From assembly GCA_977030845.1 (NCBI GenBank), contig OZ365115.1:18972001-19036000 (forward strand): DNA of 64,000 nucleotides, in the 5' to 3' direction. The translations under genes were made by a program, and so were the position numbers. Below the pieces are notes generated by a model that was not told where the DNA came from, did no database searches, and saw nothing but the letters and a program-made list of their open reading frames with translations. This stretch comes from Fimbriosthenelais zetlandica (lineage: Eukaryota). Below are positions 7,457-63,908 of this stretch, piece after piece (position 1 is the stretch's first letter; each line of letters begins with the position of its first letter).

Positions 7457-10400
7457 TCTTGGAATGTATCAAGGGACTAATAACTGGCGACCATGTGCAC
7501 ATAATTTGCTATCTCCACAGAAAAGCCTGACCGCACAAGTCAGGGAAAATCCTTCTTCCTTTTCACAAGGGTGTAATCAAGCTTTAAATTTTTTCCATCT
7601 CGGTATTGGACGGGAAGGGCAAAATGAAGCAGCCCCTGCGGGGACCTGCATCATGAGGAATATTCCTAAAGGGTCAATATAGAGTGAAGGAAGGGGATTC
7701 TATCATGGATATTGTGCCCCTTTGGATCTGCAATGAAAGGTGTCATCCGAGGTGGCCGACACTGTCATTTGAAAGCTGCAATAATTAATGAATGGACAGC
7801 TGGACTCTTTCAAAATTCATCTATGGGAAATAAATACGAGATAATGTTTAATTTCCGTTGATATTTTCCATAATAGGAAAAAATATCGGTTAAAATGAAC
7901 CTAAATCAATTAATAAAAGAAATGAGAACAAATCATTTGATATAATCTTTCAATCCCCAAATGACACGAATTCACTTCGATCATCGTCAACATAGCTGAA
8001 AACCAAGATAGTCATATTCTTTCATCGAAAAGGCAAAAATATGAAATAGTGTTCAGCCATCCTTGTCATTCAAAACCTGGCATTCAATAAATGAGGAAAC
8101 CAAAACATAAATCAAGGCACACTCCTCAACCATCCATTATCACCCCGTCCCAACTGTGGTAGGTCATCATCATCCCTTCCCATTTTCCTTATTTTTGCAT
8201 AGACTTGTTTTTTTATTATTATGATAATTCCAATGGTATATATTCCAACCCAGAAGGTCATTCCTGTATTCATTTAAAATGAGCCAGAAAATATTTGACA
8301 GAATAATTCTAACAGAGTTAACAACTGTACCAAATGATATTTTGTCTACAAACTTTCAGCAGCTTTAAAATGTGAAATACGAATTGTAAAGTGCAAGCAT
8401 GTAGAATTATATTTCCCCAAGATAATGCATGAAGATGAGGATAAGAATCGCTCAGCAGGACCCAATGCATGTCTAATGTTGGCAGGCTAATGATAACTTA
8501 CCTGCAGATTAACAAACCAATTCCATGTTACCACCTGCATCCGGGCGTTGTCCACGAATAGCAGGATAAGTATTGGTAGGAGTGAGAACAGGTGTAACCC
8601 TTCTTCTTTCCTCCAAGATATTCATCTAATGCACTCACATATATATATATACGGAGGGGCAAACTAAATATATAATAATAACCTCCCACAATGATATCCA
8701 CCTCTGCTCCTGTGAACAACACTTGGGCGTATATATATATAATGAAGGCGAGGCGAGCGTGAACGAACATGGGGTAAAAACTATATATGAAGGACAATCA
8801 GGCATTAATTCGCGACATGATAATATGTGTGTTACTTTTCAAGATGCACCAGAGCATGGCAACAATTAAACTGGCATTTTAATGAAAGATCAAATGAGTA
8901 CATGTGATTAGTATATATTACAGCACATGACGACAAAAGGACATCTGCATATCAGGGAGGATTAGGAATGCAATAATGTTTTAGCTGCGAGATTCAGAGA
9001 TTTCAAGCATTGCACAGAACAAATTGCGTTTTGTATAATATGTATTTTGGGGTCATCACTTTTACAGTTAAGTACTTGCATGCCTTTGACAGGTATCTTC
9101 ACCATTGCACTTAAATGTATATGAGAACATGTAGGGCAGGATCAAGGGTCAGAAATAAAACATCCACTCTGATATTTTCCCCTTCTGTCACCTTCAACTC
9201 GCAATGAAAGGACTCAAAGGACTTTCTTTGCCAAATCTATTGGGAGCTGTTATGTAGGGATGTATTTTGTATCTATGTAAAATGCCCTCTATATGCCTGG
9301 CTGGGTTGGTATTTCAAAACGGGTCCAACTTAATGCCCTTCAACACTCAAACAAAGGTAGAATAATAGTCTGTGTCTGATAATGGTGGAGCATCATACCT
9401 CGGGCGATAATAGGCCAACTCACCTGGAAAGGTTCCATTTTTTTATGGATAATCTATCAAATATTTGACATGGCATGGAGTGTTCGGTTTCAGGCTCTTT
9501 ATCGTTAGTGTGAAACTGGATCGCATCCATGTCATCAAAACATATGTGGACTTGGACCTGAAATTCCATGCTTAACAATTTCAAGCACTCTGGCATTTGC
9601 CTATAATATGCACAGGTTGAAGGTCGAATAAAAGTTGAACTATAGGCGTGTTAATGTTAAATACCATCTACTTTCAAACCTATGTGTACCAACAGAAGCT
9701 CAATAAACAAAAAAAACAGGATTTGTCGAGATTGCAACAATCATATTAACAGGGCTTCAGGTCAGGAGAATGTTGATATGTCAAAATAAACCAACATGTT
9801 ATTCTTCTTAAATGACAAATCCTTAAAATATTCATTTTTAATAAATGGAATGAATAAGCATTGCATGAGTATGCCCTTTCTCATCTCCGAGCGAAGAAGG
9901 CCTACTGAAATGGGTGGGTGGATGTAGCGAAAAAAAAGAGTAGAATATTGGAGGCGATTGCATAAATCGCTTGTTGATTTCACCAACCCTGCCCACCTTT
10001 CACCCGGCCCCCTAGAAAGGATACCTATATCGTTGTCATTTTTTCTGACGCAAAGGGGCACCAGGGAGCAATTAATTCCCACCTCCTGTGTGGGCTGGGA
10101 GTGCATGCAGGCACTCTTTTTGAATTGATAAATTCTGATGATCACCAGTGGAGCTAGGAGGATATATATATATATTCTTTATCATTGAAACAGTGAGATT
10201 GTGCTAACCTATAAAATCAGGGCAAACTCAGATGCAAGGAAGAGATGTAAGACAGCCAGTGAACATTGGATGCTTTTTCACTATTATATAGGAGAATGTC
10301 TATGTGAAAGGATGACGCCCTTGAATTGCAAGAATCTAGCTAATCTGTGAATTCCTGACATGCAGTGTGTTACCAACATGATTGCTTGACCCCAACTATG

Positions 10401-13400
10401 CACAAGACCCTCGGAAATGTTCAAAGTATCCTCTGGGTTTCAATGCCTTGTAAATATGCAATGAATCGGTTGTGAACAGGACATTCTTCACGCAGCCATC
10501 CGTTGTGGTTGGGAGTTATACCGCCATGGGATCTCGATATAAACAGAAAAACCCACATTTATTTATTATATACCACACATTATAGGAAACATAGGCAAGC
10601 TTTTCTCTTCTCCATGAAATAGCCTTTGTGGACTTATCACATTACTGTTGTCATTAAGAATAATAAAGTGATCTGATTTATCCCTCACGTGGCAGGCTTA
10701 TTGCCACACCTGTTGTCAATGTGAAAGCGAGGCTGGACTTTGAATAATATTCGGGATGAAAAGTCTAACTAGGTAATTGATTAATCACTAACAGGCTGTT
10801 AGAAAAACTCTCCCATGCATCTAACCCCGCCCCCCCCCCGCCCCCCGCCCCCTCACTCACTCCCTTCCTCAAGTTGTATTATAGCCCAGTTGAACACCTG
10901 GCTTTTATGAATTATGCAAGTGTGGGAGATGCAGCTATGGGACTGCAATGGAACATGGAGAATAATCCAAGGCATTTGCCTGGCTTATCAGATCAAAGCA
11001 TTGTCAGAGGTGAGAACTGATAAGAGCAATCACACCTTTGCCCATTGTATGAGTTCTTGGAAAATTGGCAAAGCAAAACCTGATGCACTTATTTCAGATT
11101 TTGACAGTTTATTCATGCCAATGTTGATGGTGAATTGCCTATACACACTCTGCAGGGATGGGTCTGGGATTTCTTCTCAGGGAAATCCGGGCCATCAATT
11201 TATAATCTTGCCCATAGTGACGTGTATGGAATCTTTCTATACTCGTTAGCCATTCCCAAGATCTGTCAAGCAATACTGTGCACAGAGCCATACAACTATA
11301 TTTTTTTCACTTGTATTCTCTCTTGTGAATTGCGCTACATAGGTCAAATCGTATGTAGGTTTTCTCAGAGAAATTTTCAGTGATTGTATTGAAGAAAAGA
11401 AGAGTTTCCGGAAGATTTAGCAAATAAACATGTTTTTTCAAAAAGATTCAAGCAGCCATTAGATTTTCATATCAAGCAATATTATCTAGACGGGTTCTAT
11501 AGCTTCTAATCTTTTATATCAGCAATAAAAGCACTGGACTTATCACATCATTCTTGAGAAAAACAAACGTCATACTTATATATTATTCTTTTCATGAATA
11601 ATAACCTAACTCAATATATAAGATATCTCAGAATTTAGCACACCTGCATATCCGAGCACTGAGTGTATACAAATTACAAGCAGCTCACTTGACGTATCTG
11701 ACGGATAAAAGTGAGGGACAATGATTGAAAAGTTTCATGCCGAGTCTTCTGATAATCTTATATCAGGTTCTGGCGGTTTCAAGCACAATATAAATAAAAG
11801 AGGATACACGTGTTGAGAGATAACAGAACTATCCGGAATGGTGGAGGAAAATGCCCCGTCAAAACAACTCAACATATTATAAATGATAAATAGTGGTTAT
11901 GCTTCCATAAATTGTAATTTTCAAATGCAAAAATGTGTGTTTATAGGAGCTGATGCATAACTTGTACATGTATATGCAACCTTTTTAATATTTTATACAG
12001 TTTAATATGCATCTATTATTGTTTGATAATGGCATTGTTTAGCTGAAGAAAATCACCTGCTTGCAGTGTACTTTTGGGTTGTAAGCACAGAGCCATAAGT
12101 CGCTGGCATTGCACATGCCGTGTGTGTGTGGGACAGTGGCTTCTGACGCGAGATTTGGTTGGGGTGAGAGGTTAAGAGGCTACAACTAGTAGCATGTGGA
12201 CCTATTTTGTGAGGAAGGAGAAGGCAGTGGATGATTTATTACAGCCAAAAGTGAGTTGTGTTTGTTGAAGAACTGATTCTTAGCCGGTATGCAATGCTGG
12301 GGTGCACAATGGTGGAGCGATGGGGAAGCAGGTGGAAAAAGTAGCAGAGAAAATGGACGAATCTAACGTGCGGAATAGGGAATAAGCGAATAGATTTGGT
12401 TTGTTCCCCTCGCCCTTCGGACAGTCGTTGCCTGTCGTTTATTAGCATATGTATGAATATAAATGCAATCATAAAGGGGAATGTTGATGGATACGATGGT
12501 TGTTGCACATAGAGGCTATAGTGGCCAGCAAACAAAACATGTCTCTTTATTCCAATTTGGTCGCCCGATAACATTATCAAGACGCTGAGGTCAGGAGAGG
12601 GCGCCACCAACTTCCTCCATCCATCAATGATTTGGCAAGCGATCTGCGCATGCTTGGTTACATTAAGGCTTGATGGGTGCAAGACCAACCTATGAATCAA
12701 GGTCCATTAAAAACACCATTCATAGCAAAAATGAATAGCTCTAAATGGTCCAAGAAACACAGCCTTTCTCTTGTACACAAAGTGACAGAGCAAAAAGCAA
12801 TTCACTTTATCTCCTATAAAGAAATGCCTTTCGTTTTATAATGAGAATTACACACTGATATATATATATCTGAAACAGCACTGATGTAATGGTATAAAAT
12901 GGAAAGCCCCTTCCCTTAATTCCATCTTTCGCACAAGACTTGTGCAGTTCTTCATAATGTTTGCAACTTTTAGATGGAAACAGTGGGAATGACAATAAGG
13001 CCCGTTCCAGGAGAATTGATCCTACCCAAGGGAGAGGGATCGCGGAAGGGTTCTGGCCTTATTTCGGCCCCATTTCATTTCTATAAAGCCACATTAGTCG
13101 GGCAGTCTCCAAGGACGGGTAAAGAACATTAGTCACAGAGTGGGACTGGCTGGCAGGAGATGTGTTAATAACATTCGCCACAAAACTAATGGTGCCATGG
13201 CAACCAGTGGGAGCCATTGGTCAGAGACGGGCACTATCTCTGATTTCATATTTCCCTGTCCAGGGGAATGGCACAGATTTGTTCATGGACCTCCACTGGG
13301 GTAAGACCGAGGGTGGATTATTATAGTGAAGGCCGGTAAGGGATTGGACGATGAAGGCATGCAAGAAGGGCGAATTATTGAAAACATTGGTCTTCATGAT

Positions 13401-47900: not shown

Positions 47901-50900
47901 AAGAATCTCAATGCGGTAAATCATAACTATAGAGACAAACTTCTGTTGTATGTTGAGGACGACAGACTCGATCAGGGATGGCTGGCGTAAGCTTTAGGGA
48001 TTTAGCTGGGAATTGTGCTGGCAATAGCCTTCTATGAGGCGGATCAAGTCAATGTCAGACGGATGGTAGTGGAGGCCCTATTATCTCAGCTACAATGGGT
48101 CGTCACTCACTACAAACAACACAGGAGGCTCGGGCCAGCTGCCTGATTTCAGGGCTCAGCGAGCTTTTATACTTTAATGCCATACAAAGTGGTTCTGACA
48201 GTTTGATTGTGTTGATACCACTTTGTATGATAAGGAGGTTTAAAGAGGACATTAGGAGTATAATTCCAGATGAGATTGGAGAGATTAAGTCAGCCAGCTC
48301 TTGGAGGCAAGAGTTTGATGAAGTGAGGGATAAAAAATGGCACTGGCAGAAAAATGAGGTCTGAGCATATTGTATGTGGCGTAACCTATAGGTAATTGTT
48401 GTTTCCATTATAGCTGAAGCAATTGCATGCCAGGCTTGGGTACTTTTTTATTCTGGGTAACGTCATATTTATGCTCAGGATAGGAATTGATGTACTTTGT
48501 TTTGGAGTATATATATAGATCGAAAAAGATATTCTCCGTTTTAACTGAAGATTCAAGAAACCTTTTTGGATTTCCTATATATATTCAAGTGGGAAGATCA
48601 AGTTACTGGCTGGAGACTCGGATGATTTCCTTTGAGCACGGCACGCTGTTGTCTGTGATTCCTTCTCTTGGGAAATTGGGAATGGAAAGGAAAGAGGTCG
48701 CCTTGACAAACCGGCTAGTAAATTGTCATGGTGATGTACCTGTCAATAAAAGAGTGTGAGACAATCAGAGCAATGGGCTGAGATAGGTCTAAATATTGGT
48801 GTGCCGGGGGTATTGGTCGCTGGCCAGTGTTAGCCTGGCTTGACAACTGATTAGATCAAACTGATTGTCCGGGCGAAAAGAACAGACAGATCAGACTTCA
48901 TCACTGATAAGGGACGGCTGGACAGTCACATGGACTGATAAAACAAATGGACAATTTGCTAGTAACAATACATTACTCTTGATTTTACTGTGCAGTCGGT
49001 TTGTCATTTGGGGGAAGTAATAATATATAGTTTCAGTCTTCTGAGTCTTCAATTGTTAAAATTGTTACCAAGAGTGTGAGCTGGTATTCACCCATAACAG
49101 GCTCTATAAAAATTCTAAAAAAAAAAAGAAAAAAGAATTTGATCCTTTTATTTCTTGTGAATATATTTTTGTTATCAGGATAAATGAAATTTTGATTATG
49201 GGTACGTGAATAACGACTTTATTCTTTATTAGCTAAGAGTACTTGTTTATAAGAAATTTAACAGGAAGGAATTAAAGAAACCTCATTTTAATAGAAGACC
49301 TAGAACAGAACAAGTTTGTTTATAAAAATACGCATTATTTGTTTGTCGGGGAAATGATCATTAAGTGGCATGATCGTAAGTCATGCCCTCTATCAAATCC
49401 AGAATGATTACTTTCTGATTCCAGCATCCTTCCTGCCCACTATTGAAGATAAATGTTATCAGAGGCCAGTGTTACTGAACATGTACCATCCTTGTCTCAT
49501 ACTCTCCATCCAAATGGAATTGACCAATCAGGAGACAAGCCTTGGTCATGTGACATAAGCTTGGCCTAATCGGAAGCATTTCTAGTTGTGAATTGCTGCT
49601 TGGCCACCACTTGAGCTTATGGTGTGGTCAGCCTGGTGGCCAAGTGTAATTAAGTTATAATTAAAAGCCAGTTGTAACAACTATCTAGTCTTTTCAGTCA
49701 TAAATAATACCTCGGAAAGCGATGTTGTTTGCTGCCTTCGGCCTCATACACTATGGAAATGATGTGGTGGCAACCTGTATGACATTGGCGGCCTGGTGTT
49801 TTGATAGATTCATATAATGTATGTGCTTTTAGATGTGGGCTAGTAATGGAATGGCACTGTTCTCTGCCTATCATGATGGCACTTTGTGGGCAACTGGGCC
49901 TGGTTGTAATGGACACTAAGTCCCTCTTAGAATTGGTGTATTTAGCATTGATGACCACTGATAACGATTGGTATTTGTTGCTGACTCCTGGCTCTGCAAA
50001 AAATGGTGGCCATCCCACTTAATAAAGCTGGCAGTGTTGTTATCTTTGATGGACACCATTACATGGTATATGCTAATGCAGTGGATTTGTCTGTTATCAT
50101 TGCGTATGTTGATTACTCGATCTTTGACCTAAGGGCGCTGATTGTTGCATATTTGTGGGAAAAGTTACAGGTTCTAATTACACGTTGGAGATTTTATTGG
50201 CATGCTCAGGTCTTTAGTTTACAGTCGGATTTGGCTTAACCTGATTTTGTGCTGAAGACTTTTTNNNNNNNNNNNNNNNNNNNNNNNNNNNNNNNNNNNN
50301 NNNNNNNNNNNNNNNNNNNNNNNNNNNNNNNNNNNNNNNNNNNNNNNNNNNNNNNNNNNNNNNNNNNNNNNNNNNNNNNNNNNNNNNNNNNNNNNNNNNN
50401 NNNNCGCTGCTAAGGCTATATTCATGTTTGATATATAGGCCTTATTTCATTGGATAGTATGTTGGTGTTGGATATCACAAAATATTGGGTTTTACAAAAT
50501 ATATTTATAACATAATTTACGTTTGTTTGGTGCGTGAATGATTTGTAGCTATCATGGTTCATTTTTTTCCTCTTTTCTCTTTTATTCAGTTTACTGACTT
50601 GCAAATAGAGACAGTGAAGAACCCTAAGCCCCTTCCTGACATGAACAAGCTGGCCTTTGGGGCAGAGTTCTCCGAACATATGTTTGAAGTCGACTGGACC
50701 GATGCAAATGGCTGGGGCACACCTGCAATCAAACCTATGACAGAATTCCACATACATCCGGCTGCTAAAGTATTCCATTATGCCGTTGAAGTAAGTATTC
50801 ATTGGATGATTCGGTCCATTATGCTTTATTTTCAGTAAAATCTGAAAGTATTTGGGCAAAATTATTATGTTTACATTAATCCGAAATCATAGAACTATTT

Positions 50901-53900
50901 TAGTATACATGTGTGTAACATTTCATAGAAATATATGAAAACGCATCAGGGATCCCATTTACTCTATTTAATTTGCCCATCCTTGACTATATTATATATC
51001 TATGATTTACCTAGCAGTTTATACTTTGGTTACATTATGATGCATTTCACTCAATACGTTTATATATATGGAAAATTCCTATCTGAAAAAATTCCGATAT
51101 GACTATACTTTAGACTTGTATGAAGGTCCTTTGAGGCGACAGTGCTGAGACCTAGTGTTCACAACAGGATTCATCCGAGTGTCATTTTCGCTTGAAAATA
51201 CTCCTACAGTTCTATGAAAATACTACCCTGATTCAGACACCAGTAGATCTATGTATACTATTGACAGTTGAATAATGTCTAAATCTGACCGTCACTAAAT
51301 TGGCGTCTCTCCCCATTTAATATTTTTTGTTATGCCCCAGCTGAGTTATGAATTGTTTTTTTTATTTCGGATCAAGTTTCTGCTTACTGATTTTATGCAG
51401 AATGATGTTTTATTAGTTTGCTCGTGTTTGATAGTTCATTGAGTTCACAGTTATCTTTTCCTTAGTTGTATGAAGGCCTCAAAGCTTATTATGGGGTTGA
51501 TGGAAAGATACGACTGTTCCGTCCGACATTGAATATGAAGCGGATGAAGATAACAGCGGAACGTGCAACTTTGCCATATGTGAGTCCCTGTCACCTTTAC
51601 CATGCCTGAAACTAAAAGTCAAGGCATGTGAATGTGACCTATGAAAGGACTGTTGCAGGGTATAATTTACCTGGTATCGCATCGCATTTTGCGACGCAAT
51701 TTGATGTATTTACGATATAAAATCAAATTGTCATCGCAATTTTTGCGATACATGTTTTCTGCATTCTTCAGGTGGTAAAAGAGAAATTGCGATGCAAAAT
51801 CGCTTGATTGGATTCTGACTGCTATGCAAAATTTTTTCAAACCAAAATTATACCCTGTATTTTACTACCACATATGTATATATGACGCTATGGCAGGGAC
51901 ACGGGCAAGACCGCTTAATATTGAATACCACCAAAGATAATATGAGAGCCATCTGACGAGCTTTGCCATGAATGTTTGCATGGCTAATGTATGGTTGAAG
52001 GATGCAATCCTGTCCATTATGCATGATTACAAAGTGGTTCTTTGGACATGCTTAATCTTTTCTGGCTCAAATGCTTCTCTGATCATTAATTTCCTACTTT
52101 TTGTAAAAGGTTGTATTCCCACGTCGAGGGAACTATACTTTTGCCAATACTAAAACTTTACTATACTAAAATTACAATAAGTTGACAAAAAAAACTTAAT
52201 GGTTGAGAGAAATCTGAAAGGAACACAATATGGTAAAGAGGACAATTTTCACGTGTCCATACGTGTGTATAGCTTGCATGATATCACTCCGCTAACGAGA
52301 AGCATGTCATTATGTTTTGCCAATTAAACTGTGCAATAATATGATTGCAACAGGAACGGTTTAATAAATGCTTCACTAATCCTAAGTTGTATTTCCAGAA
52401 GGATTTCTATACTATGAAAGAACTTCTACCAAGTCTACATCAGGAAGCCAATCCTACACCCAACTATCAGTCCGCTGAACGATTCATATATGGCCCAACG
52501 CTCAATTATTGAAAGCCAATTAATATTCTCTCTGCCCTTTGGTTCTCTTTTTCTCTCTTATGAACATAATAGCTATTTGAAGGGATGAAGGCCTACCATG
52601 GAGTGGATGGTGCTATCCGGCTTTTCCGTCCAGATCTCAACATGGTTCGCATGCGAAGCTCAGCTCAGCGTGCATCACTACCTGTGAGTTTTCATAGCAA
52701 ATAGGAAATGTACAAATAATCTAGTAGTGTGCGCATGTCATCTTTCTACTGGTGATACCCTTATTGTGTTCTATTAGATGTTATTTTTGTATTAGAGCCT
52801 GGTGTTGTTTTTTAGATGTTATGCTTGCAGCTTAGATGTTATTTCTTATTTGCTATAATTATGTTAGTTGTTTTTTAGATGTTATGTTTAGATGTTATTT
52901 TTTACTTGATGTAATTATGTTAGTTGAATTTATTTCGTTTATTATCATAAGAGTACAGTTTAATGTGCAGTTCTGCAAGCATTTCATACATTTCTGTTCT
53001 TACAATGCATTATTTTTATATCATTTTCAAAATAAAGTTGTTTTGAAAGTGATATAATGAAACCATATATTTGGATTGTCCCAAGTAAAGGAACAGATTC
53101 CGTTCTCTCGTCATTCTTGGAACATGAAACTATAAACTGTGATATTCTTCTGGAATTTCATCTTCAAATGTGCATATATATGGTGTCTTAATTTATTCAT
53201 AAGATTCCTTGTCTACACACCCACTTGCATTATTGCATGATTTGTTAAGTAGTCTATAGTATGTAGTTACTTAACTTATTGAACTTCTTGGTCGACTTCT
53301 GTCCGAGAAGTGGTATTGGAGGGGGTATGCCCCGAGAGTGAATGGGAGGTGGACCCGAGGGCTTTAGCCCGAGGGTTTCCCCCGTGCCATTCACCCGAGG
53401 TGCAGACAAGCACCAATACGACTTTGAGTTCAATTCTCTATTAATGCTATCCATTCCAAAATGTCATAGAAATTATAGGAATTACTTAAGTTGACATCAG
53501 AACCACGCAAATCAGAGAACAGAAAATTAGGGCAAAATGTATCAAGCAGGCAGGTGATATCATATGATGGTATCACCCACCTTAATCATATCAAGGCCCA
53601 ATTCTAATCTTATGGGCAACACATTTTAAGGAGATCACAAATAAGATGTTTCAACATATATGTCAATTACTCTTCATAATTTGAGCCTTTTGGCTTTATG
53701 TCCTACTCATGTAAATAATAGTCTGGCTTTATGTATATGATTCTTTGCAGGGTCTTGATTCCTTATAAATAATGCTGATTCTATTGTAAATTTTCTTTGA
53801 ATCTCGTCTTCTGTAGACTGTATAATATTTAGCCTATTCTATGTTTATTCAGTTTGGACCTGTTGAGGATAGTGTGTTCATCGGGTGGTGGGTGCTATGC

Positions 53901-56900
53901 TATGCATTAGATGGCTTCTCTACTACTATCATTTGATTGTATAAATATGTTCATCAGGAATTTTATTATAATTCGAAGAAATTATGATTGATTAAATGAA
54001 AAAGACCATTTAACTACTGACAATAGTATTGTTATAATAGAAAATAAAGTGAAAGTATCTCTAGGGTTCAAGATTTTCATAAATTAATGCTGCTGTTTCA
54101 CTGATGATTTCTGACTAATAATGATTAATAACTCTCCATCGTTTATTTCTATGCTTTAGGACTTTGATTCTACAGAGCTGATTAGCTGTATGAAGAAGTT
54201 GGTCAGTATTGACAAGCGGTTTGTACCCCAATCCACAGAAGCCTCTCTCTACATACGCCCCTGTTTAATAGGGACTGAGGTAAATATCTCTCAGATAACG
54301 TTATATATAAGCAAAGCCATATTAGTTTTCCTTCAATTTAGGGTTCCCAGCGACTCTGGAAAACCTGGAAAATGAGTTTCAATGTTTTCCTTACAGGGAA
54401 AAATCCGGGAATTTGAGGAAAACTAGAAAAATCAGGGGAAACTCGGGAATTTGAACACTAACTAAGAATGATAATCTTTCGGAGGTTGACGAGTACCATT
54501 CCATGCCCGCCACTTAAGTTTAGAGTGCTTCATATAACTAAAATATCTTCTGGAATTTAAGGGCTTACTCAGGGAAAACTCGGGGAATTCTGTTTTAATT
54601 ATGTAACACGTGATATAGAAAGGGAGTTGATGTGTTCGTCTTATTCAGAAGTACAAATACTTTGAGGATGTATTGATGATTCGTTGTATTTTTCCTGGTT
54701 TTCTGTGAATTCTTAAGAATACTTTATGATATATGATTAGGTGACGAGGGTTTAATCCTAGGGGTCCAAATTTAAAAAAATGTTCCTTCAGTACTATTTT
54801 ACCGCCGGTATAATGAAAAAAGAATTTAAAAATGTCTTTATATATGTTGGTTATATGGATTCCTATATATGTTGCAGCCAACTCTAGGTGTGACAAAAAC
54901 CAATGACGCCAAATTATTCATTATTACCGGGCCTGTGGGGCCATACTACCCTACTGGTTTCAAACCCGTTACTCTTCTTGCTGACCCTCAATATGTCCGA
55001 GCATTTGAGGGAGGATGTGGACGTTACAAAATGGGCGCGTAAGTAATAAAATATTTAGATCGACTGCATGGATTCAAATTTCACAAATAAAAATAGCAAT
55101 GATGAATAAAAATGAGTTTATTAAAAGACAAATGAAAAAAAGCTACCGTATTTGCCGGTGTATATGCCGCACCTTTTTACCCTAGAAATGACCCAAATCG
55201 CGGCCTGCGGCTTATACAACGGTGCCGTTTATATTATGCATTTTTCTCCCTTCGGTCTAAGTTTGGTGGATGACTAAAAATGAGTTTGTTAAATGACAAA
55301 TGGAAAAATACCGGTACACGTTCGGAACCTTACTGTAGGCCTATTTATGAAATTGGGTTTAATTCGTGAGAGTTTTTTTTTTCAGAAACTATGCCCCCAC
55401 AATCTACATTCAGATTGAAGCACTTAAGAAGCACAACTGCCAGCAGGTGCTTTGGTTGTACGGCCCTGATCAGAAAATTACTGAGGTGGGAACCATGAAC
55501 TTCTTCATGTACTGGAAAAATGAACGAGGAGGTATGTACTATGTAGATTCCTTGATAGATCTGTCTCAGTTTGTCAGCGACTCTGACAATCAGGGAAAAC
55601 CAGGAAAATGAGTTTCACTTTTTTCAGACAGGGAAAACTCAGGGAATTTGAGAAAAACTGGAAAAATCAGGGAAAACACAGGCAAACTTCAACACTGACT
55701 CAGAACGGTAATCTTTCGGAGGTTGACTTATACAATCGCATGCCCGCCACTGAAGTTCAGAGTGCTTCATTAGATTAAAATATCTCCTGGAATTTAAGGG
55801 TTTACTCAGGGAAAAATCAGGGAATTCTGTTTTCATGAACTGCTGGGAACCCTGATAGATTTTTCTCAGTTCATGGTTAATTTATAATGTGACTTTGTAA
55901 AATGATCTAATCACCGAAATTTGTTGACCTATCCAGAGAAGGAATTAGTCACTCCTCCCCTTGACTCGGGAACTATTCTCCCAGGAATTACGCGAAGAAG
56001 TCTACTAGACATGGCCAGAGAATGGGTAGGCCCTTAAAGTTTAAATTTTATCCATTATTTTCATCTCATTATTAATTGTCAAAGAGAAGACTACATTGCT
56101 GTTTCACTGAATCCGCTTTTATATTTTCAGAACGACTTTAAAGTGTCAGAACGTGAGATAACCATGGCAGAATTAATACAAGGCGTTCAGGAAAAGAGAG
56201 TGAGTAATCGTTGACTCTCGAAATTCTGGTTAATTCTAGTTAATACCTTTTCTTGATTGTCATCAATTACTGCTTGAAACAGCTAAAAATTGAGTCATAT
56301 CACAGAGTTCCCAGTGACTCTGGAAATTAGGGAAAACCTGGAAAATTAGCTTCACCTTTTCCAGACAGGGAAAACTCAGGAAATTTGAGAAAAACTGAAA
56401 AAAAAATACTCGGGGCATTTCAACGCTGACTCAGAAGGATAATCTTTTGGAGGTTGACCCGAACAATCCCATGCCCGCCACTGAAGTTTAGAGGGCTTCA
56501 TATCACTATAATATCTCCTGGTATTTAAGGGCTTACTCAGGGAATTCTGTTTTCATGAACTTCTGGGAAGCCTGTATTATATATTTTCGTACTTTTCTAG
56601 GTACTCGAGCTATTCGGTGCTGGCACAGCTTGCGTTGTTTCCGCCATTGAAAAGATTATCTACCAAGGCAAGCCAGTACACATACCCACCATGGAGGAGG
56701 GTGCTCCTCTCACCAACCGATTCCTCAAGGAACTCACCGACATTCAGGTAAAGTGTTATCACTTGTCAAGACACGCCTACATCTCTGTTATTTTGGGGGA
56801 AGTGGGAAAAACACTAGTATCACTACAGGGTTCCCAGCGACTCTAGAAATCAAGAAAAACCTGGAAAATGATTTTCACTTTTTCCAGACAGGGAAAACTC

Positions 56901-57274
56901 AGGGAATTTGAGAAAAACTGAAAACAAAATCAGGGAAAACTCAGGGAATTTCAATACTGACTCAAATGGATTGACGCGTACAAGGACTAAAATATCTCCT
57001 TGTTGAATTTAAGGGAAATCTCAAGGAATTCTGTTTTCGTGAACTGCTGGGAACCCTGCTGTGACAAATATTCTATATTTTTTAACCAAATGTATTTCAG
57101 GATAAATAATTCCATTTTTCTTCTTATAAAACCCTAAATGATATCAATAAAAAATGTCCTAAAACTAAAAAAAATGATTTCTTTCCGTTAATGTACATTT
57201 TAGGAATCTCAATGATTTTGTTTTTCTTCCAGTATGGACGCAAGCCCAGCCCCTGGGTGGTGACCGTGGAATAA
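35931..57274 (+). CDS. BCAT: Branched-chain amino-acid aminotransferase (fold type IV PLP enzyme), 11 coding exons with duplicated exon 4; 402 aa (4b) or 403 aa (4a)
   Basis: Exons 35931-35951, 41045-41146, 50590-50790, [51466-51579 or 52573-52683], 54160-54279, 54878-55038, 55386-55531, 55937-56025, 56131-56199, 56601-56747, 57233-57274. All GT-AG with consistent phases. Motifs HYAVE-LFEG-KAY, SLYIRP, YKMGANY (PLP lysine), [26 protein letters not shown]. Confidence 0.97.
37606..37905. mobile_element. MITE in BCAT intron 1 (second family member at about 40196-40420)
   Basis: Termini caaggttccc / gggaacctg; direct repeat atatg at 37601-37605 and 37906-37910; internal sequence shared with 40196-40420. 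Confidence 0.7.
39731..40788. mobile_element. Non-autonomous Tc1/mariner (pogo/Tigger-like) element with a nested MITE
   Basis: 24-bp TIR cagtcagacctcgt(t/g)aatccggac, TA duplication (39729-39730, 40789-40790), subterminal atccgga repeats, no transposase ORF. Confidence 0.8.
41045..41146 (+). CDS. BCAT: BCAT exon 2 (mitochondrial presequence-like, [34 protein letters not shown])
   Basis: Strong acceptor ttttctttttcag, donor AAG|GTAAGA; Arg/Ser-rich, no acidic residues, ends in FK like other BCATs. Confidence 0.9.
41174..41436. repeat. Interspersed repeat, copy A (inverted partner at 47449-47707)
   Basis: About 260 bp alignable by eye to the reverse complement of 47449-47707 (e.g. gtagagcgagcccagaca / tgtctgggctcgctctac). 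Confidence 0.8.
41476..41852. mobile_element. MITE with CAGGGTT...AACCCT termini
   Basis: cagggttcg ... cgaaccct ends and internal cctggaaa repeats, similar in style to the 54-57 kb family. Confidence 0.55.
42318..42514. mobile_element. MITE, copy A (inverted partner at 51656-51857)
   Basis: Termini cagggtttaatt / aattataccttg; interior is the reverse complement of 51656-51857. Confidence 0.75.
43979..44153. mobile_element. Degenerate TA-CCGTATT-type Tc1/pogo MITE (relative at about 55146-55315)
   Basis: Left end taccgtatttaccggcgtattta with a decayed inverted copy near 44135-44155; similar start at 55144. Confidence 0.45.
47449..47707. repeat. Interspersed repeat, copy B (inverted relative to 41174-41436)
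   Basis: See copy A. Confidence 0.8.
50265..50404. other. Assembly gap (140 N) in BCAT intron 2
   Basis: Run of N. Confidence 1.
50590..50790 (+). CDS. BCAT: BCAT exon 3
   Basis: FTDLQIETV...[10 protein letters not shown]...[11 protein letters not shown]; 201 nt, phase 0-0. Confidence 0.97.
51466..51579 (+). CDS. BCAT: BCAT exon 4a ([38 protein letters not shown])
   Basis: Acceptor ttatcttttccttag, donor TAT|GTGAGT, 114 nt, no stops, phase 0-0. Confidence 0.9.
51656..51857. mobile_element. MITE, copy B, between exons 4a and 4b
   Basis: Termini cagggtataatt / aattataccctg; inverted copy of 42318-42514. Confidence 0.8.
52573..52683 (+). CDS. BCAT: BCAT exon 4b ([37 protein letters not shown])
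   Basis: Long pyrimidine tract then ataatag acceptor, donor CCT|GTGAGT, 111 nt, no stops, phase 0-0. Confidence 0.92.
54160..54279 (+). CDS. BCAT: BCAT exon 5
   Basis: [10 protein letters not shown]...[13 protein letters not shown]; 120 nt. Confidence 0.97.
54878..55038 (+). CDS. BCAT: BCAT exon 6 (contains the PLP lysine, YKMG)
   Basis: PTLGVTK...GPVGPYY...[15 protein letters not shown]; 161 nt, phase 0-2. Confidence 0.97.
55386..55531 (+). CDS. BCAT: BCAT exon 7
   Basis: NYAPT...QQVLWLYG...EVGTMNFF; 146 nt, phase 2-1. Confidence 0.97.
55937..56025 (+). CDS. BCAT: BCAT exon 8
   Basis: [28 protein letters not shown]; 89 nt, phase 1-0. Confidence 0.97.
56131..56199 (+). CDS. BCAT: BCAT exon 9
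   Basis: [23 protein letters not shown]; 69 nt. Confidence 0.96.
56601..56747 (+). CDS. BCAT: BCAT exon 10
   Basis: [16 protein letters not shown]...IPTMEEG...LTDIQ; 147 nt. Confidence 0.97.
57233..57274 (+). CDS. BCAT: BCAT exon 11 (terminal)
   Basis: [13 protein letters not shown] after the acceptor tttttcttccag. Confidence 0.95.
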   Translation, partial: YGRKPSPWVVTVE

Positions 57275-61038: not shown

Positions 61039-62863
<1,825 letters not shown>

Positions 62864-63194: not shown

Positions 63195-63318
63195 ATGTCT
63201 AGACGTTCAGGATCAGGGAAACTATTTATTGGCCGATTAAGCAAACGAGCCAATAGCAGAGATCTGGAGGAAGTATTTGAACATTATGGCAGACTTGCTA
63301 GATGCGATATAAAGTATG
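63195..63318 (+). CDS. Serine/arginine-rich splicing factor-like RRM protein, exon 1 (gene continues beyond the window)
   Basis: CAAG ATG; MSRRSGSGKLFIGRLSKRANSRDLEEVFEHYGRLARCDIKY with RNP2-like LFIGRL; donor G|GTAAGT. Exact subfamily not assignable. Confidence 0.85.
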
Positions 63319-63908
63319 GTAAGTGGCGATCGTCTCGTTAATTTAGAGATTTTCGTACTCCCGTCAGGCCGAGCTCCCTCCTCCTGCCACCACCCACTTT
63401 GCCTTTGGCAGCCATCTTGGACTTGGCCTAGATCAGTAGATGAGGGACAGAAAAAATTATGGCCCTATCATGTCCGCTAAAACAAGAATACGGGGGTCAT
63501 TATCGCTTATTATTACATGTGGAAATGTGTTTCCTTTACAGTAAATTTAACATTAGAGACTCTTAGACTTAGTCTAGTCTCCAGTCCAGAGTTTAATGTG
63601 TTATTGTTAACACCCCCCGCCATCGGGGCCAGACTACTGTCTGACTAGCCTCTAGGCCCTAGTAAGGCCTGGATCTATGACTACTGATTTTTAAATCATG
63701 TACATGGGCCTTGTCAACTCTAAGTTAGTGTTGACAATAATTGTTTTATTGTGTCGTTAAAATTAAATGTTTTAGTGGCAAAAGTTTAGTTTGACAATTC
63801 CAGTTATAGTTATAGTATACGATACTTATAGTTATATTATACGGTACCTGGTACGTAGATCTATTAAAGTTAAGGACTGTTTTAAAATGTGTTTTTTTGT
63901 GCTTGCAG

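What the first reader, a model, noticed from the sequence alone, without database searches (positions are those of the whole stretch)
51466..52683. Tandemly duplicated, probably mutually exclusive exon 4 in BCAT
Seen: two homologous exons (4a 114 nt, 4b 111 nt), 26/37 residues identical, both stop-free, phase 0-0, with canonical AG and GTGAGT sites, 993 nt apart, between single-copy exons 3 and 5. The flanking introns are unrelated, and many differences in conserved codons are synonymous, implying an old duplication with both copies under selection. Including both would duplicate core secondary structure and skipping both would delete catalytic residues, so one-of-two splicing is the sensible reading (inference). 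Both are multiples of 3 and far apart, so neither NMD nor steric hindrance explains exclusivity; another mechanism is needed. As I recall the human proteins, 4a resembles BCAT1 (EGLK, KIRLF, RATLP) and 4b resembles BCAT2 (LFEGMKA), suggesting isozyme diversity by splicing instead of gene duplication. I know of no described mutually exclusive exons in BCAT but could not search the literature.
Basis: partly seen in the sequence, partly recalled or inferred. Interest (0 to 1): 0.9.

Follow-up and report, generated by a model that had tools for sequence, protein, structure and literature searches.

The report
Alternative exon pair in worm BCAT
An annelid gene for the enzyme that starts branched-chain amino-acid breakdown has two side-by-side, selectively kept versions of one exon, differing at a substrate-pocket residue; they are probably used one at a time, but no RNA data could be obtained.

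Summary
Two homologous exons (4a 51466-51579, 114 nt; 4b 52573-52683, 111 nt) lie 993 nt apart between single-copy exons 3 and 5 of a BCAT gene. Both are stop-free, phase 0-0, with AG acceptors and GTGAGT donors. They share 26/37 residues, and 18 of those 26 use different codons.

The annelid Paralvinella palmiformis has the same tandem pair, intact. A contig from a third species carries a 4a-type exon just after exon 3. All three upstream copies begin LYEGLK. Tyr replaces a Phe found in about 99% of 413 BCAT exon-4 sequences. This Phe is Phe75 of the human mitochondrial BCAT side-chain pocket.

Five annelid or annelid-like genomes and one unplaced invertebrate contig have a single exon 4. Mollusc RefSeq isoforms differ only at the termini.

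Both exons are therefore old and under selection. One-of-two splicing is the best reading (about 0.65), but it is inferred. No sequencing run was listed for this genome and no transcript of this species was found. NMD, steric hindrance and U2/U12 incompatibility cannot enforce exclusivity, and no convincing RNA structure appeared.

The BCAT1/BCAT2 resemblance is not supported. No paper linking mutually exclusive exons to BCAT was found. The scan noted similar exon pairs in other genes of this genome, but not this one. This is a new member of a known kind.

The parts
50590..50790 (+). BCAT exon 3 (constitutive, 201 nt, phase 0-0), donor gtaagt
   Evidence: tblastn of BCAT homologues
50791..51465 (+). 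intron between exon 3 and exon 4a (675 nt)
   Evidence: no similarity to the Paralvinella intron
51466..51579 (+). exon 4a (114 nt). Upstream, derived copy starting LYEGLK. It puts Tyr at the position of human BCATm Phe75 and has one extra Tyr codon at its 3' end.
51580..52572 (+). intron between 4a and 4b (993 nt), with U2-type GTGAGT...AG ends
52573..52683 (+). exon 4b (111 nt). Downstream, canonical-type copy starting LFEGMK. Its polypyrimidine tract sits about 13 nt upstream of the AG.
52684..54159 (+). intron between 4b and exon 5 (1476 nt)
54160..54279 (+). BCAT exon 5 (constitutive, 120 nt, phase 0-0)
54878..57274 (+). BCAT exons 6-11: 54878-55038, 55386-55531, 55937-56025, 56131-56199, 56601-56747 and 57233-57274 with the stop codon. 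Exon 6 holds the Schiff-base lysine motif [12 protein letters not shown].

Best explanation
[quoted passage not shown] Both copies have been kept as coding exons. Exon 4 encodes residues 74-110 in human mitochondrial BCAT numbering, at the start of the class IV aminotransferase domain. This includes side-chain-pocket residue Phe75 and, from my memory of the human enzyme, the PLP-phosphate ligand Arg99.

The most likely use is one copy per mRNA. Exon 3 joins either 4a or 4b, which then joins exon 5. This would give two enzymes of 362 and 361 modelled residues that differ at 11 positions plus one inserted Tyr. Exon 4b keeps the near-universal LFEGMK start. Exon 4a carries LYEGLK, putting a Tyr hydroxyl into the hydrophobic side-chain pocket. 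That could shift substrate preference or kinetics.

Shown here: the homology, the intact splice signals, purifying selection on both copies, their presence in other annelids, and the position of the Phe/Tyr switch. Inferred: mutually exclusive inclusion, any tissue or stage regulation, and any functional difference. The mechanism of exclusivity is unknown. By elimination it would rest on trans-acting splicing regulators or on RNA structure that I could not detect. Alternatively, exclusivity may be only approximate, with double-inclusion and double-skip products being non-functional.
For: The anatomy and statistics of the pair come. The spliced model is 60-67% identical over about 361 residues to annelid and mollusc BCATs that carry PF01063. 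The exon 3/4/5 boundaries are shared with other animals.

Paralvinella palmiformis (L001) has two intact copies at 9460-9570 and 10999-11109, each with AG and GTGAGT. Logan contig L086 has exon 3 followed 140 nt later by a 4a-type exon starting LYEGLKCYYG with AG/GTGAGT. In an exon tree it groups with window 4a at 98/92 support.

For all copy pairs dS is saturated, while dN is 0.26-0.30 for 4a against 4b, Paralvinella copy 1 or L086. A neutral relic could not stay open and spliceable over that divergence.

Tyr at exon position 2 occurs in 5 of 413 BCAT exon-4 sequences collected here. The Tyr+Leu combination occurs in only one of them, Paralvinella copy 1, so the LYEGLK start shared by all three upstream copies is rare. 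Exon 4 aligns to residues 74-110 of human BCATm chains. Phe75 is listed among the side-chain-pocket residues in PMC6957111. The transcripts nearest the window in the tree (P0240, P0251, P0254) carry the canonical 4b-type start LFEGMK.
Against: There is no RNA evidence at all. Both sequencing-run searches listed nothing, and no protein of this species was returned by two profile searches.

No full-length transcript with a 4a-type exon (LYEGLK) was recovered from any annelid. Cluster members of seven annelid-like transcript clusters showed only one exon-4 version each.

No known mechanism of exclusivity applies, and no significant or conserved RNA pairing was found. The only published gene model covering such a pair, Paralvinella LSH36_275g09029, includes both copies in series.

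Window 4a has a one-codon extension not seen in any other species.
Confidence: 0.65

Rival explanations
1. Exon 4b is the only exon really used, and 4a is an unused or nearly unused leftover of the duplication (a pseudo-exon).
For: Exon 4b has the canonical LFEGMK start shared by about 84% of BCATs. The nearest transcripts all carry the canonical 4b-type start. No 4a-type full-length transcript was found. Exon 4a has an odd extra codon.
Against: Exon 4a is stop-free, with a better polypyrimidine tract than 4b and a GTGAGT donor. Synonymous sites between 4a and its counterparts in Paralvinella and L086 are saturated, yet 26-27 of 37 residues are kept. The same rare LYEGLK start is held in three distant species. 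A neutral relic would have decayed.
Confidence: 0.1
2. Splicing is not strictly exclusive. Exon 4a is an optional or noisy cassette, and mRNAs with both exons or with neither are common. The in-frame products are simply non-functional or have some other role.
For: Both-in (+225 nt) and both-out products stay in frame, so NMD would not remove them. None of the known enforcing mechanisms applies, and no competing RNA structure was detected.
Against: Exon 4 encodes core elements of the class IV fold, including Phe75 and the Arg matching human Arg99. Doubling or deleting them should wreck the enzyme. Long-term selection on both copies implies that each is read in a productive mRNA.
Confidence: 0.15
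3. Both exons are constitutively included in series, as in the Paralvinella gene model, giving a BCAT with an internally duplicated 37-residue segment.
For: The NCBI model LSH36_275g09029 (P0205) contains both copies. The reading frame allows it.
Against: It was the only one of 2881 hits in the region search to score far above single-copy level (194 bits against 83 or less), and one of only two proteins carrying the motif twice, the other being a 1024-residue double BCAT. It looks like an automatic prediction. No transcript-derived protein has a doubled segment. The duplicated part is buried in the active-site core.
Confidence: 0.05

Closest known systems
Mutually exclusive exons derived from tandem exon duplication, for example pyruvate kinase PKM exons 9/10 and the sets surveyed in PMC5740500, PMC9741552 and PMC9013439
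   Same: There are two adjacent homologous exons of near-equal length and the same phase between constitutive exons. Both are under purifying selection and conserved across species. They replace a structural segment next to the active site of a metabolic enzyme. The PKM comparison is from my own knowledge.
   Different: Exclusive use is not demonstrated here. The gene (BCAT) and the lineage (some annelids) are not among described cases, and three literature searches found no paper linking the two. No enforcing mechanism could be identified.
Vertebrate BCAT1 (cytosolic) and BCAT2 (mitochondrial) gene pair
   Same: Both give two BCAT isozymes in one organism that differ in the residue 74-110 segment, for example Leu versus Met at the fifth residue of the segment.
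   Different: The vertebrate pair are whole-gene paralogues that differ throughout and in targeting. Here only 37-38 residues would differ. Exons 4a and 4b are about equally similar to BCAT1 (26 versus 25 of 37). Both vertebrate isozymes keep Phe at position 75. There is no orthology.
Docking-site/selector RNA-structure systems, such as Dscam exon 6, 14-3-3zeta and other clusters (PMC6071210)
   Same: These are clusters of tandem homologous exons in which steric, NMD and spliceosome-type mechanisms do not apply.
   Different: No complementary docking/selector pair stands out. The inverted repeats are 14-27 nt, AT-rich and 70-94% complementary. Whole-intron duplex energies lie within shuffled controls (z of -0.2 and -1.8). 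No intronic sequence is conserved with Paralvinella.

Membership tests
Tandem-duplication-derived mutually exclusive exon (MXE) pair | Adjacent exons are homologous to each other | tested here: met
   26/37 residues identical, reciprocal tblastn E about 1e-14, and no other copy in the window
Tandem-duplication-derived mutually exclusive exon (MXE) pair | Same phase and near-equal length, each with its own usable splice sites | tested here: met
   114 and 111 nt, phase 0-0, AG acceptors and GTGAGT donors
Tandem-duplication-derived mutually exclusive exon (MXE) pair | Both copies are conserved and under purifying selection in other species | tested here: met
   Two intact copies in Paralvinella. 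A 4a-type exon in L086. dS saturated with dN 0.26-0.30.
Tandem-duplication-derived mutually exclusive exon (MXE) pair | Each mature mRNA contains exactly one of the two exons | not testable with these tools
   No sequencing run was listed in either search. No transcript-derived protein of this species is in the protein collections.
Tandem-duplication-derived mutually exclusive exon (MXE) pair | A known enforcing mechanism: steric hindrance, U2/U12 incompatibility, frame-shift with NMD, or competing RNA structures | tested here: inconclusive
   The first three are excluded by the sequence: a 993-nt intron, U2-type sites, and both exons multiples of 3. RNA structure has no significant or conserved candidate, but single-sequence prediction cannot exclude one.
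Branched-chain amino-acid aminotransferase (fold type IV, Pfam PF01063) | Full-length similarity to characterised BCATs | tested here: met
   The spliced model is 60-67% identical over about 361 residues to animal BCATs carrying PF01063. Exon 4 matches human BCAT1 and BCAT2 PDB chains at residues 74-110. Single exons give sub-threshold PF01063 matches.
Branched-chain amino-acid aminotransferase (fold type IV, Pfam PF01063) | Catalytic Lys motif and PLP/substrate residues present | tested here: met
   [12 protein letters not shown] and TEVGTMN are present. The Arg aligning with human Arg99 is kept in both 4a and 4b. The residue roles come from my knowledge of human BCATm and from PMC6957111.
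Branched-chain amino-acid aminotransferase (fold type IV, Pfam PF01063) | Complete coding sequence with a start codon | tested here: not met
   The exons upstream of exon 3 were not located. An N gap (50265-50404) lies 186 nt upstream of exon 3.

The most novel reading that the evidence does not exclude
The two exons make enzymes with different substrate preference or kinetics through a splice-controlled Phe75/Tyr75 (plus Met/Leu78) switch in the side-chain pocket of a core metabolic enzyme. The switch has either been kept since before the split of distant annelid lineages or has arisen twice with the same rare Tyr/Leu signature in the upstream copy.
Probability: 0.25. Interest if true: 0.65.

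Novelty: new member of a known kind. Interest (0 to 1): 0.45.

Why it matters
If the two exons are used alternatively, one annelid gene yields two BCAT enzymes that differ exactly where the amino-acid side chain is bound. The result would resemble vertebrates' two BCAT genes, or PKM's exon 9/10 switch, but in an enzyme where no such switch has been reported. It offers a compact natural experiment, 11 substitutions plus one insertion, on what sets BCAT substrate specificity. Other notes of this scan report similar exon pairs in this genome, so annelids may rely heavily on tandem exon duplication for protein diversity. On a practical level, it flags a probable annotation error in the Paralvinella genome, where both copies are included in one model.

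Tried and rejected
1. RNA evidence. The look-up of sequencing runs on 50554-56100 (kind rna) and on exon 3 alone (kind any) both listed no run, so read laying could not be used.

2. This species' own proteins. Two profile searches that included the window's exon peptides returned no protein of the window. The first was dominated by nematodes because its seed, P0067, is from Globodera.

3. Isoform pairs inside 90% clusters. Twenty clusters were read. The annelid-like transcript clusters hold one exon-4 version each. Mollusc, Limulus and Dimorphilus isoforms differ only at the N or C termini.

4. P0271 and P0272 looked like a 4b/4a pair. They are 84% identical orthologues from two species, and the genome of the P0272 species has a single exon 4 fused to exon 5.

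5. The metagenome contig scan returned only intronless or transcript matches and bacterial genes, with no genomic exon pairs.

6. Exon-3 ORF fragments were used as handles to reach relatives' genomes. L085 and L087 are too short. L088 and L089 have introns longer than 10 kb. The contig carrying P0002 could not be served.

7. A region search with the doubled Paralvinella segment found no second gene model with both copies.

8. Exon phylogeny on 37 columns does not settle whether the Paralvinella and window duplications are one event. A 4a-type clade is allowed (AU p 0.43), and within-species clades are not rejected (p 0.13-0.18).

Full report
**Observation.** The region was read directly and both exons were translated.
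- Exon 4a (51466-51579, 114 nt) and exon 4b (52573-52683, 111 nt) are stop-free and phase 0-0.
- Both follow an AG and precede GTGAGT. They lie 993 nt apart.
- They share 26 of 37 residues and 67 of 111 bases. Of the 26 identical residues, 18 use different codons.
- tblastn of either peptide against the whole window finds only the two exons (E about 1e-14 for the cross-match, next best E 0.12). The similarity is therefore far beyond chance and there is no third copy.
- The flanking introns share only short two-copy matches.

**Gene model.** Stop-free stretches and tblastn with BCAT homologues give these exons on the + strand:
- exon 3: 50590-50790
- exon 4a and exon 4b, as above
- exon 5: 54160-54279
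- exon 6: 54878-55038
- exon 7: 55386-55531
- exon 8: 55937-56025
- exon 9: 56131-56199
- exon 10: 56601-56747
- exon 11: 57233-57274, ending in the stop codon

The exons upstream of exon 3 were not found. An N gap (50265-50404) lies just upstream and was left alone. With either exon 4, the spliced product is 60-67% identical over about 361 residues to annelid and mollusc BCATs carrying PF01063. It contains the lysine motif [12 protein letters not shown]. In a BCAT tree the window falls, with weak support, among annelid sequences. This agrees with earlier notes calling this genome probably annelid.

**Relatives.**
- The Paralvinella palmiformis gene model P0205 aligned to the window protein with a 38-residue insertion. 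The insertion is a second exon 4.
- In its genomic locus L001 the two copies lie at 9460-9570 ([20 protein letters not shown]...) and 10999-11109 (AFEGMKAYRGPDKKVRLFRP...). They sit between exon 3 (ending about 8290) and exon 5 (about 16350). Each has AG and GTGAGT.
- Logan contig L086, from a third species whose exon 3 is 56% identical to the window's, has exon 3 followed 140 nt later by LYEGLKCYYGVDNRLRIFRP... with AG and GTGAGT. The contig ends 600 nt further on.
- A single exon 4 is present in Capitella teleta (L002), Lamellibrachia satsuma (L003), Owenia fusiformis (L004), a siboglinid-like contig (L090), the compact gene of the P0272 species (L094) and L091.
- RefSeq isoforms of Mytilus, Littorina, Ruditapes, Babylonia, Biomphalaria and Limulus, and the Dimorphilus gene models, differ only at the termini.

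**Selection and age.** For every pair of exon-4 copies, Nei-Gojobori dS is saturated or undefined. dN is 0.26 for 4a against 4b, 0.26 for 4a against Paralvinella copy 1, and 0.30 for 4a against L086. A sequence free of selection could not keep an open frame, both splice sites and about 70% residue identity at that divergence. Both copies are therefore functional coding exons.

**The upstream copy is the derived one.** Among 413 exon-4 sequences in the proteins gathered here, position 2 is Phe in about 99% and Tyr in five. The Tyr plus Leu-5 combination occurs in only one of these proteins, Paralvinella copy 1. The window's 4a and the L086 exon add two more cases, and all three are upstream copies. 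Exon 4b and Paralvinella copy 2 keep Phe-2 and Met-5 and share Ser-Ser-Ala at positions 29-31.

**One duplication or two?** In a 37-column exon tree, 4a and the L086 exon pair at 98/92 support, with 4b as their sister at 85/82. The Paralvinella copies fall elsewhere. AU tests reject neither a single 4a-type clade (p 0.43) nor within-species clades (p 0.13-0.18). The duplication predates the split between the window species and the L086 species. Whether Paralvinella's pair comes from the same event or a parallel one is open. The rarity of the shared signature favours one event or strong convergence.

**What the exon encodes.** Exon 4 aligns end to end with residues 74-110 of human mitochondrial BCAT chains, and with the matching segment of BCAT1. 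It corresponds to the first 30 positions of the Pfam Aminotran_4 profile. Position 2 is Phe75, which PMC6957111 lists among the residues of the hydrophobic side-chain-binding pocket. The Arg aligning with human Arg99 is kept in both copies. From my own knowledge, human Arg99 is a PLP-phosphate ligand. Exon 4a therefore places a Tyr hydroxyl in the pocket. That it changes specificity is inference.

**Splicing.** No run was listed for a 5.5-kb stretch (kind rna) or for exon 3 alone (kind any). No protein of this species appeared in two profile searches. Annelid-like transcript clusters hold a single exon-4 version each, of the canonical type. One-of-two splicing therefore rests on inference. Each copy is selected as coding sequence, while including both or neither would duplicate or delete a core active-site segment.

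For RNA structure I found only short AT-rich inverted repeats. Intron-intron duplex energies lie within shuffled controls (which was cut off by time). No intronic sequence is conserved with Paralvinella or L086. In both species the downstream copy has the weaker polypyrimidine tract. That is compatible with regulated use but proves nothing.

**Comparison with what is known.** The arrangement matches the known class of mutually exclusive exons derived from tandem exon duplication (PMC5740500, PMC9741552, PMC9013439). Full-text searches joining mutually exclusive exons or tandem exon duplication with BCAT terms found no paper holding both. Exons 4a and 4b share 26 and 25 of 37 residues with human BCAT1. 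Exon 4b is only 1-4 residues closer to vertebrate mitochondrial BCATs.

**Verdict.** This is a real, old exon pair maintained by selection in some annelid BCAT genes. It is very probably a splice switch at the substrate pocket, but that is unproven at the RNA level. It is a new member of a known kind and of moderate interest.

Noticed in passing
window 54333-54599, 55560-55854, 56297-56574, 56820-57058: A roughly 250-300 nt interspersed repeat sits in the same orientation in four different BCAT introns (introns 5, 7, 9 and 10). The copies are 65-89% identical. It is probably a SINE- or MITE-like element.
   Followed up: partly
window 56601-56747 (exon 10): The redox-sensitive CXXC motif of animal BCATs (TACVVC in the annelid relatives of alignment A3) reads TACVVS here. 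The second cysteine is replaced by serine.
   Followed up: no
window 51577-51579: Exon 4a carries one extra codon (TAT, Tyr) before its donor. It is 114 nt, whereas every other exon-4 copy examined in seven other species is 111 nt.
   Followed up: partly
L001 9460-11109 (Paralvinella palmiformis, GCA_025642065.1): Gene model LSH36_275g09029 strings both exon-4 copies into one 404-residue protein. This is probably an annotation artefact of an alternative exon pair.
   Followed up: partly
window 52540-52572 and L001 10970-10998: In both species the downstream exon-4 copy has the poorer 3' splice region. In the window the polypyrimidine tract is displaced about 13 nt from the AG. In Paralvinella the tract is weak.
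   Followed up: no
window 61250-62311 (- strand) and 63195-63341 (+ strand): There are ORF pieces of an ARF/ARL-type small GTPase on the minus strand and of an RRM-type RNA-binding protein (KLFIGRL...) downstream of BCAT.
   Followed up: no
window 50265-50404: A 140-N gap lies 186 nt upstream of exon 3. The 5' exons of the BCAT gene were not located, so the N-terminus (targeting signal or not) is unknown.
   Followed up: no
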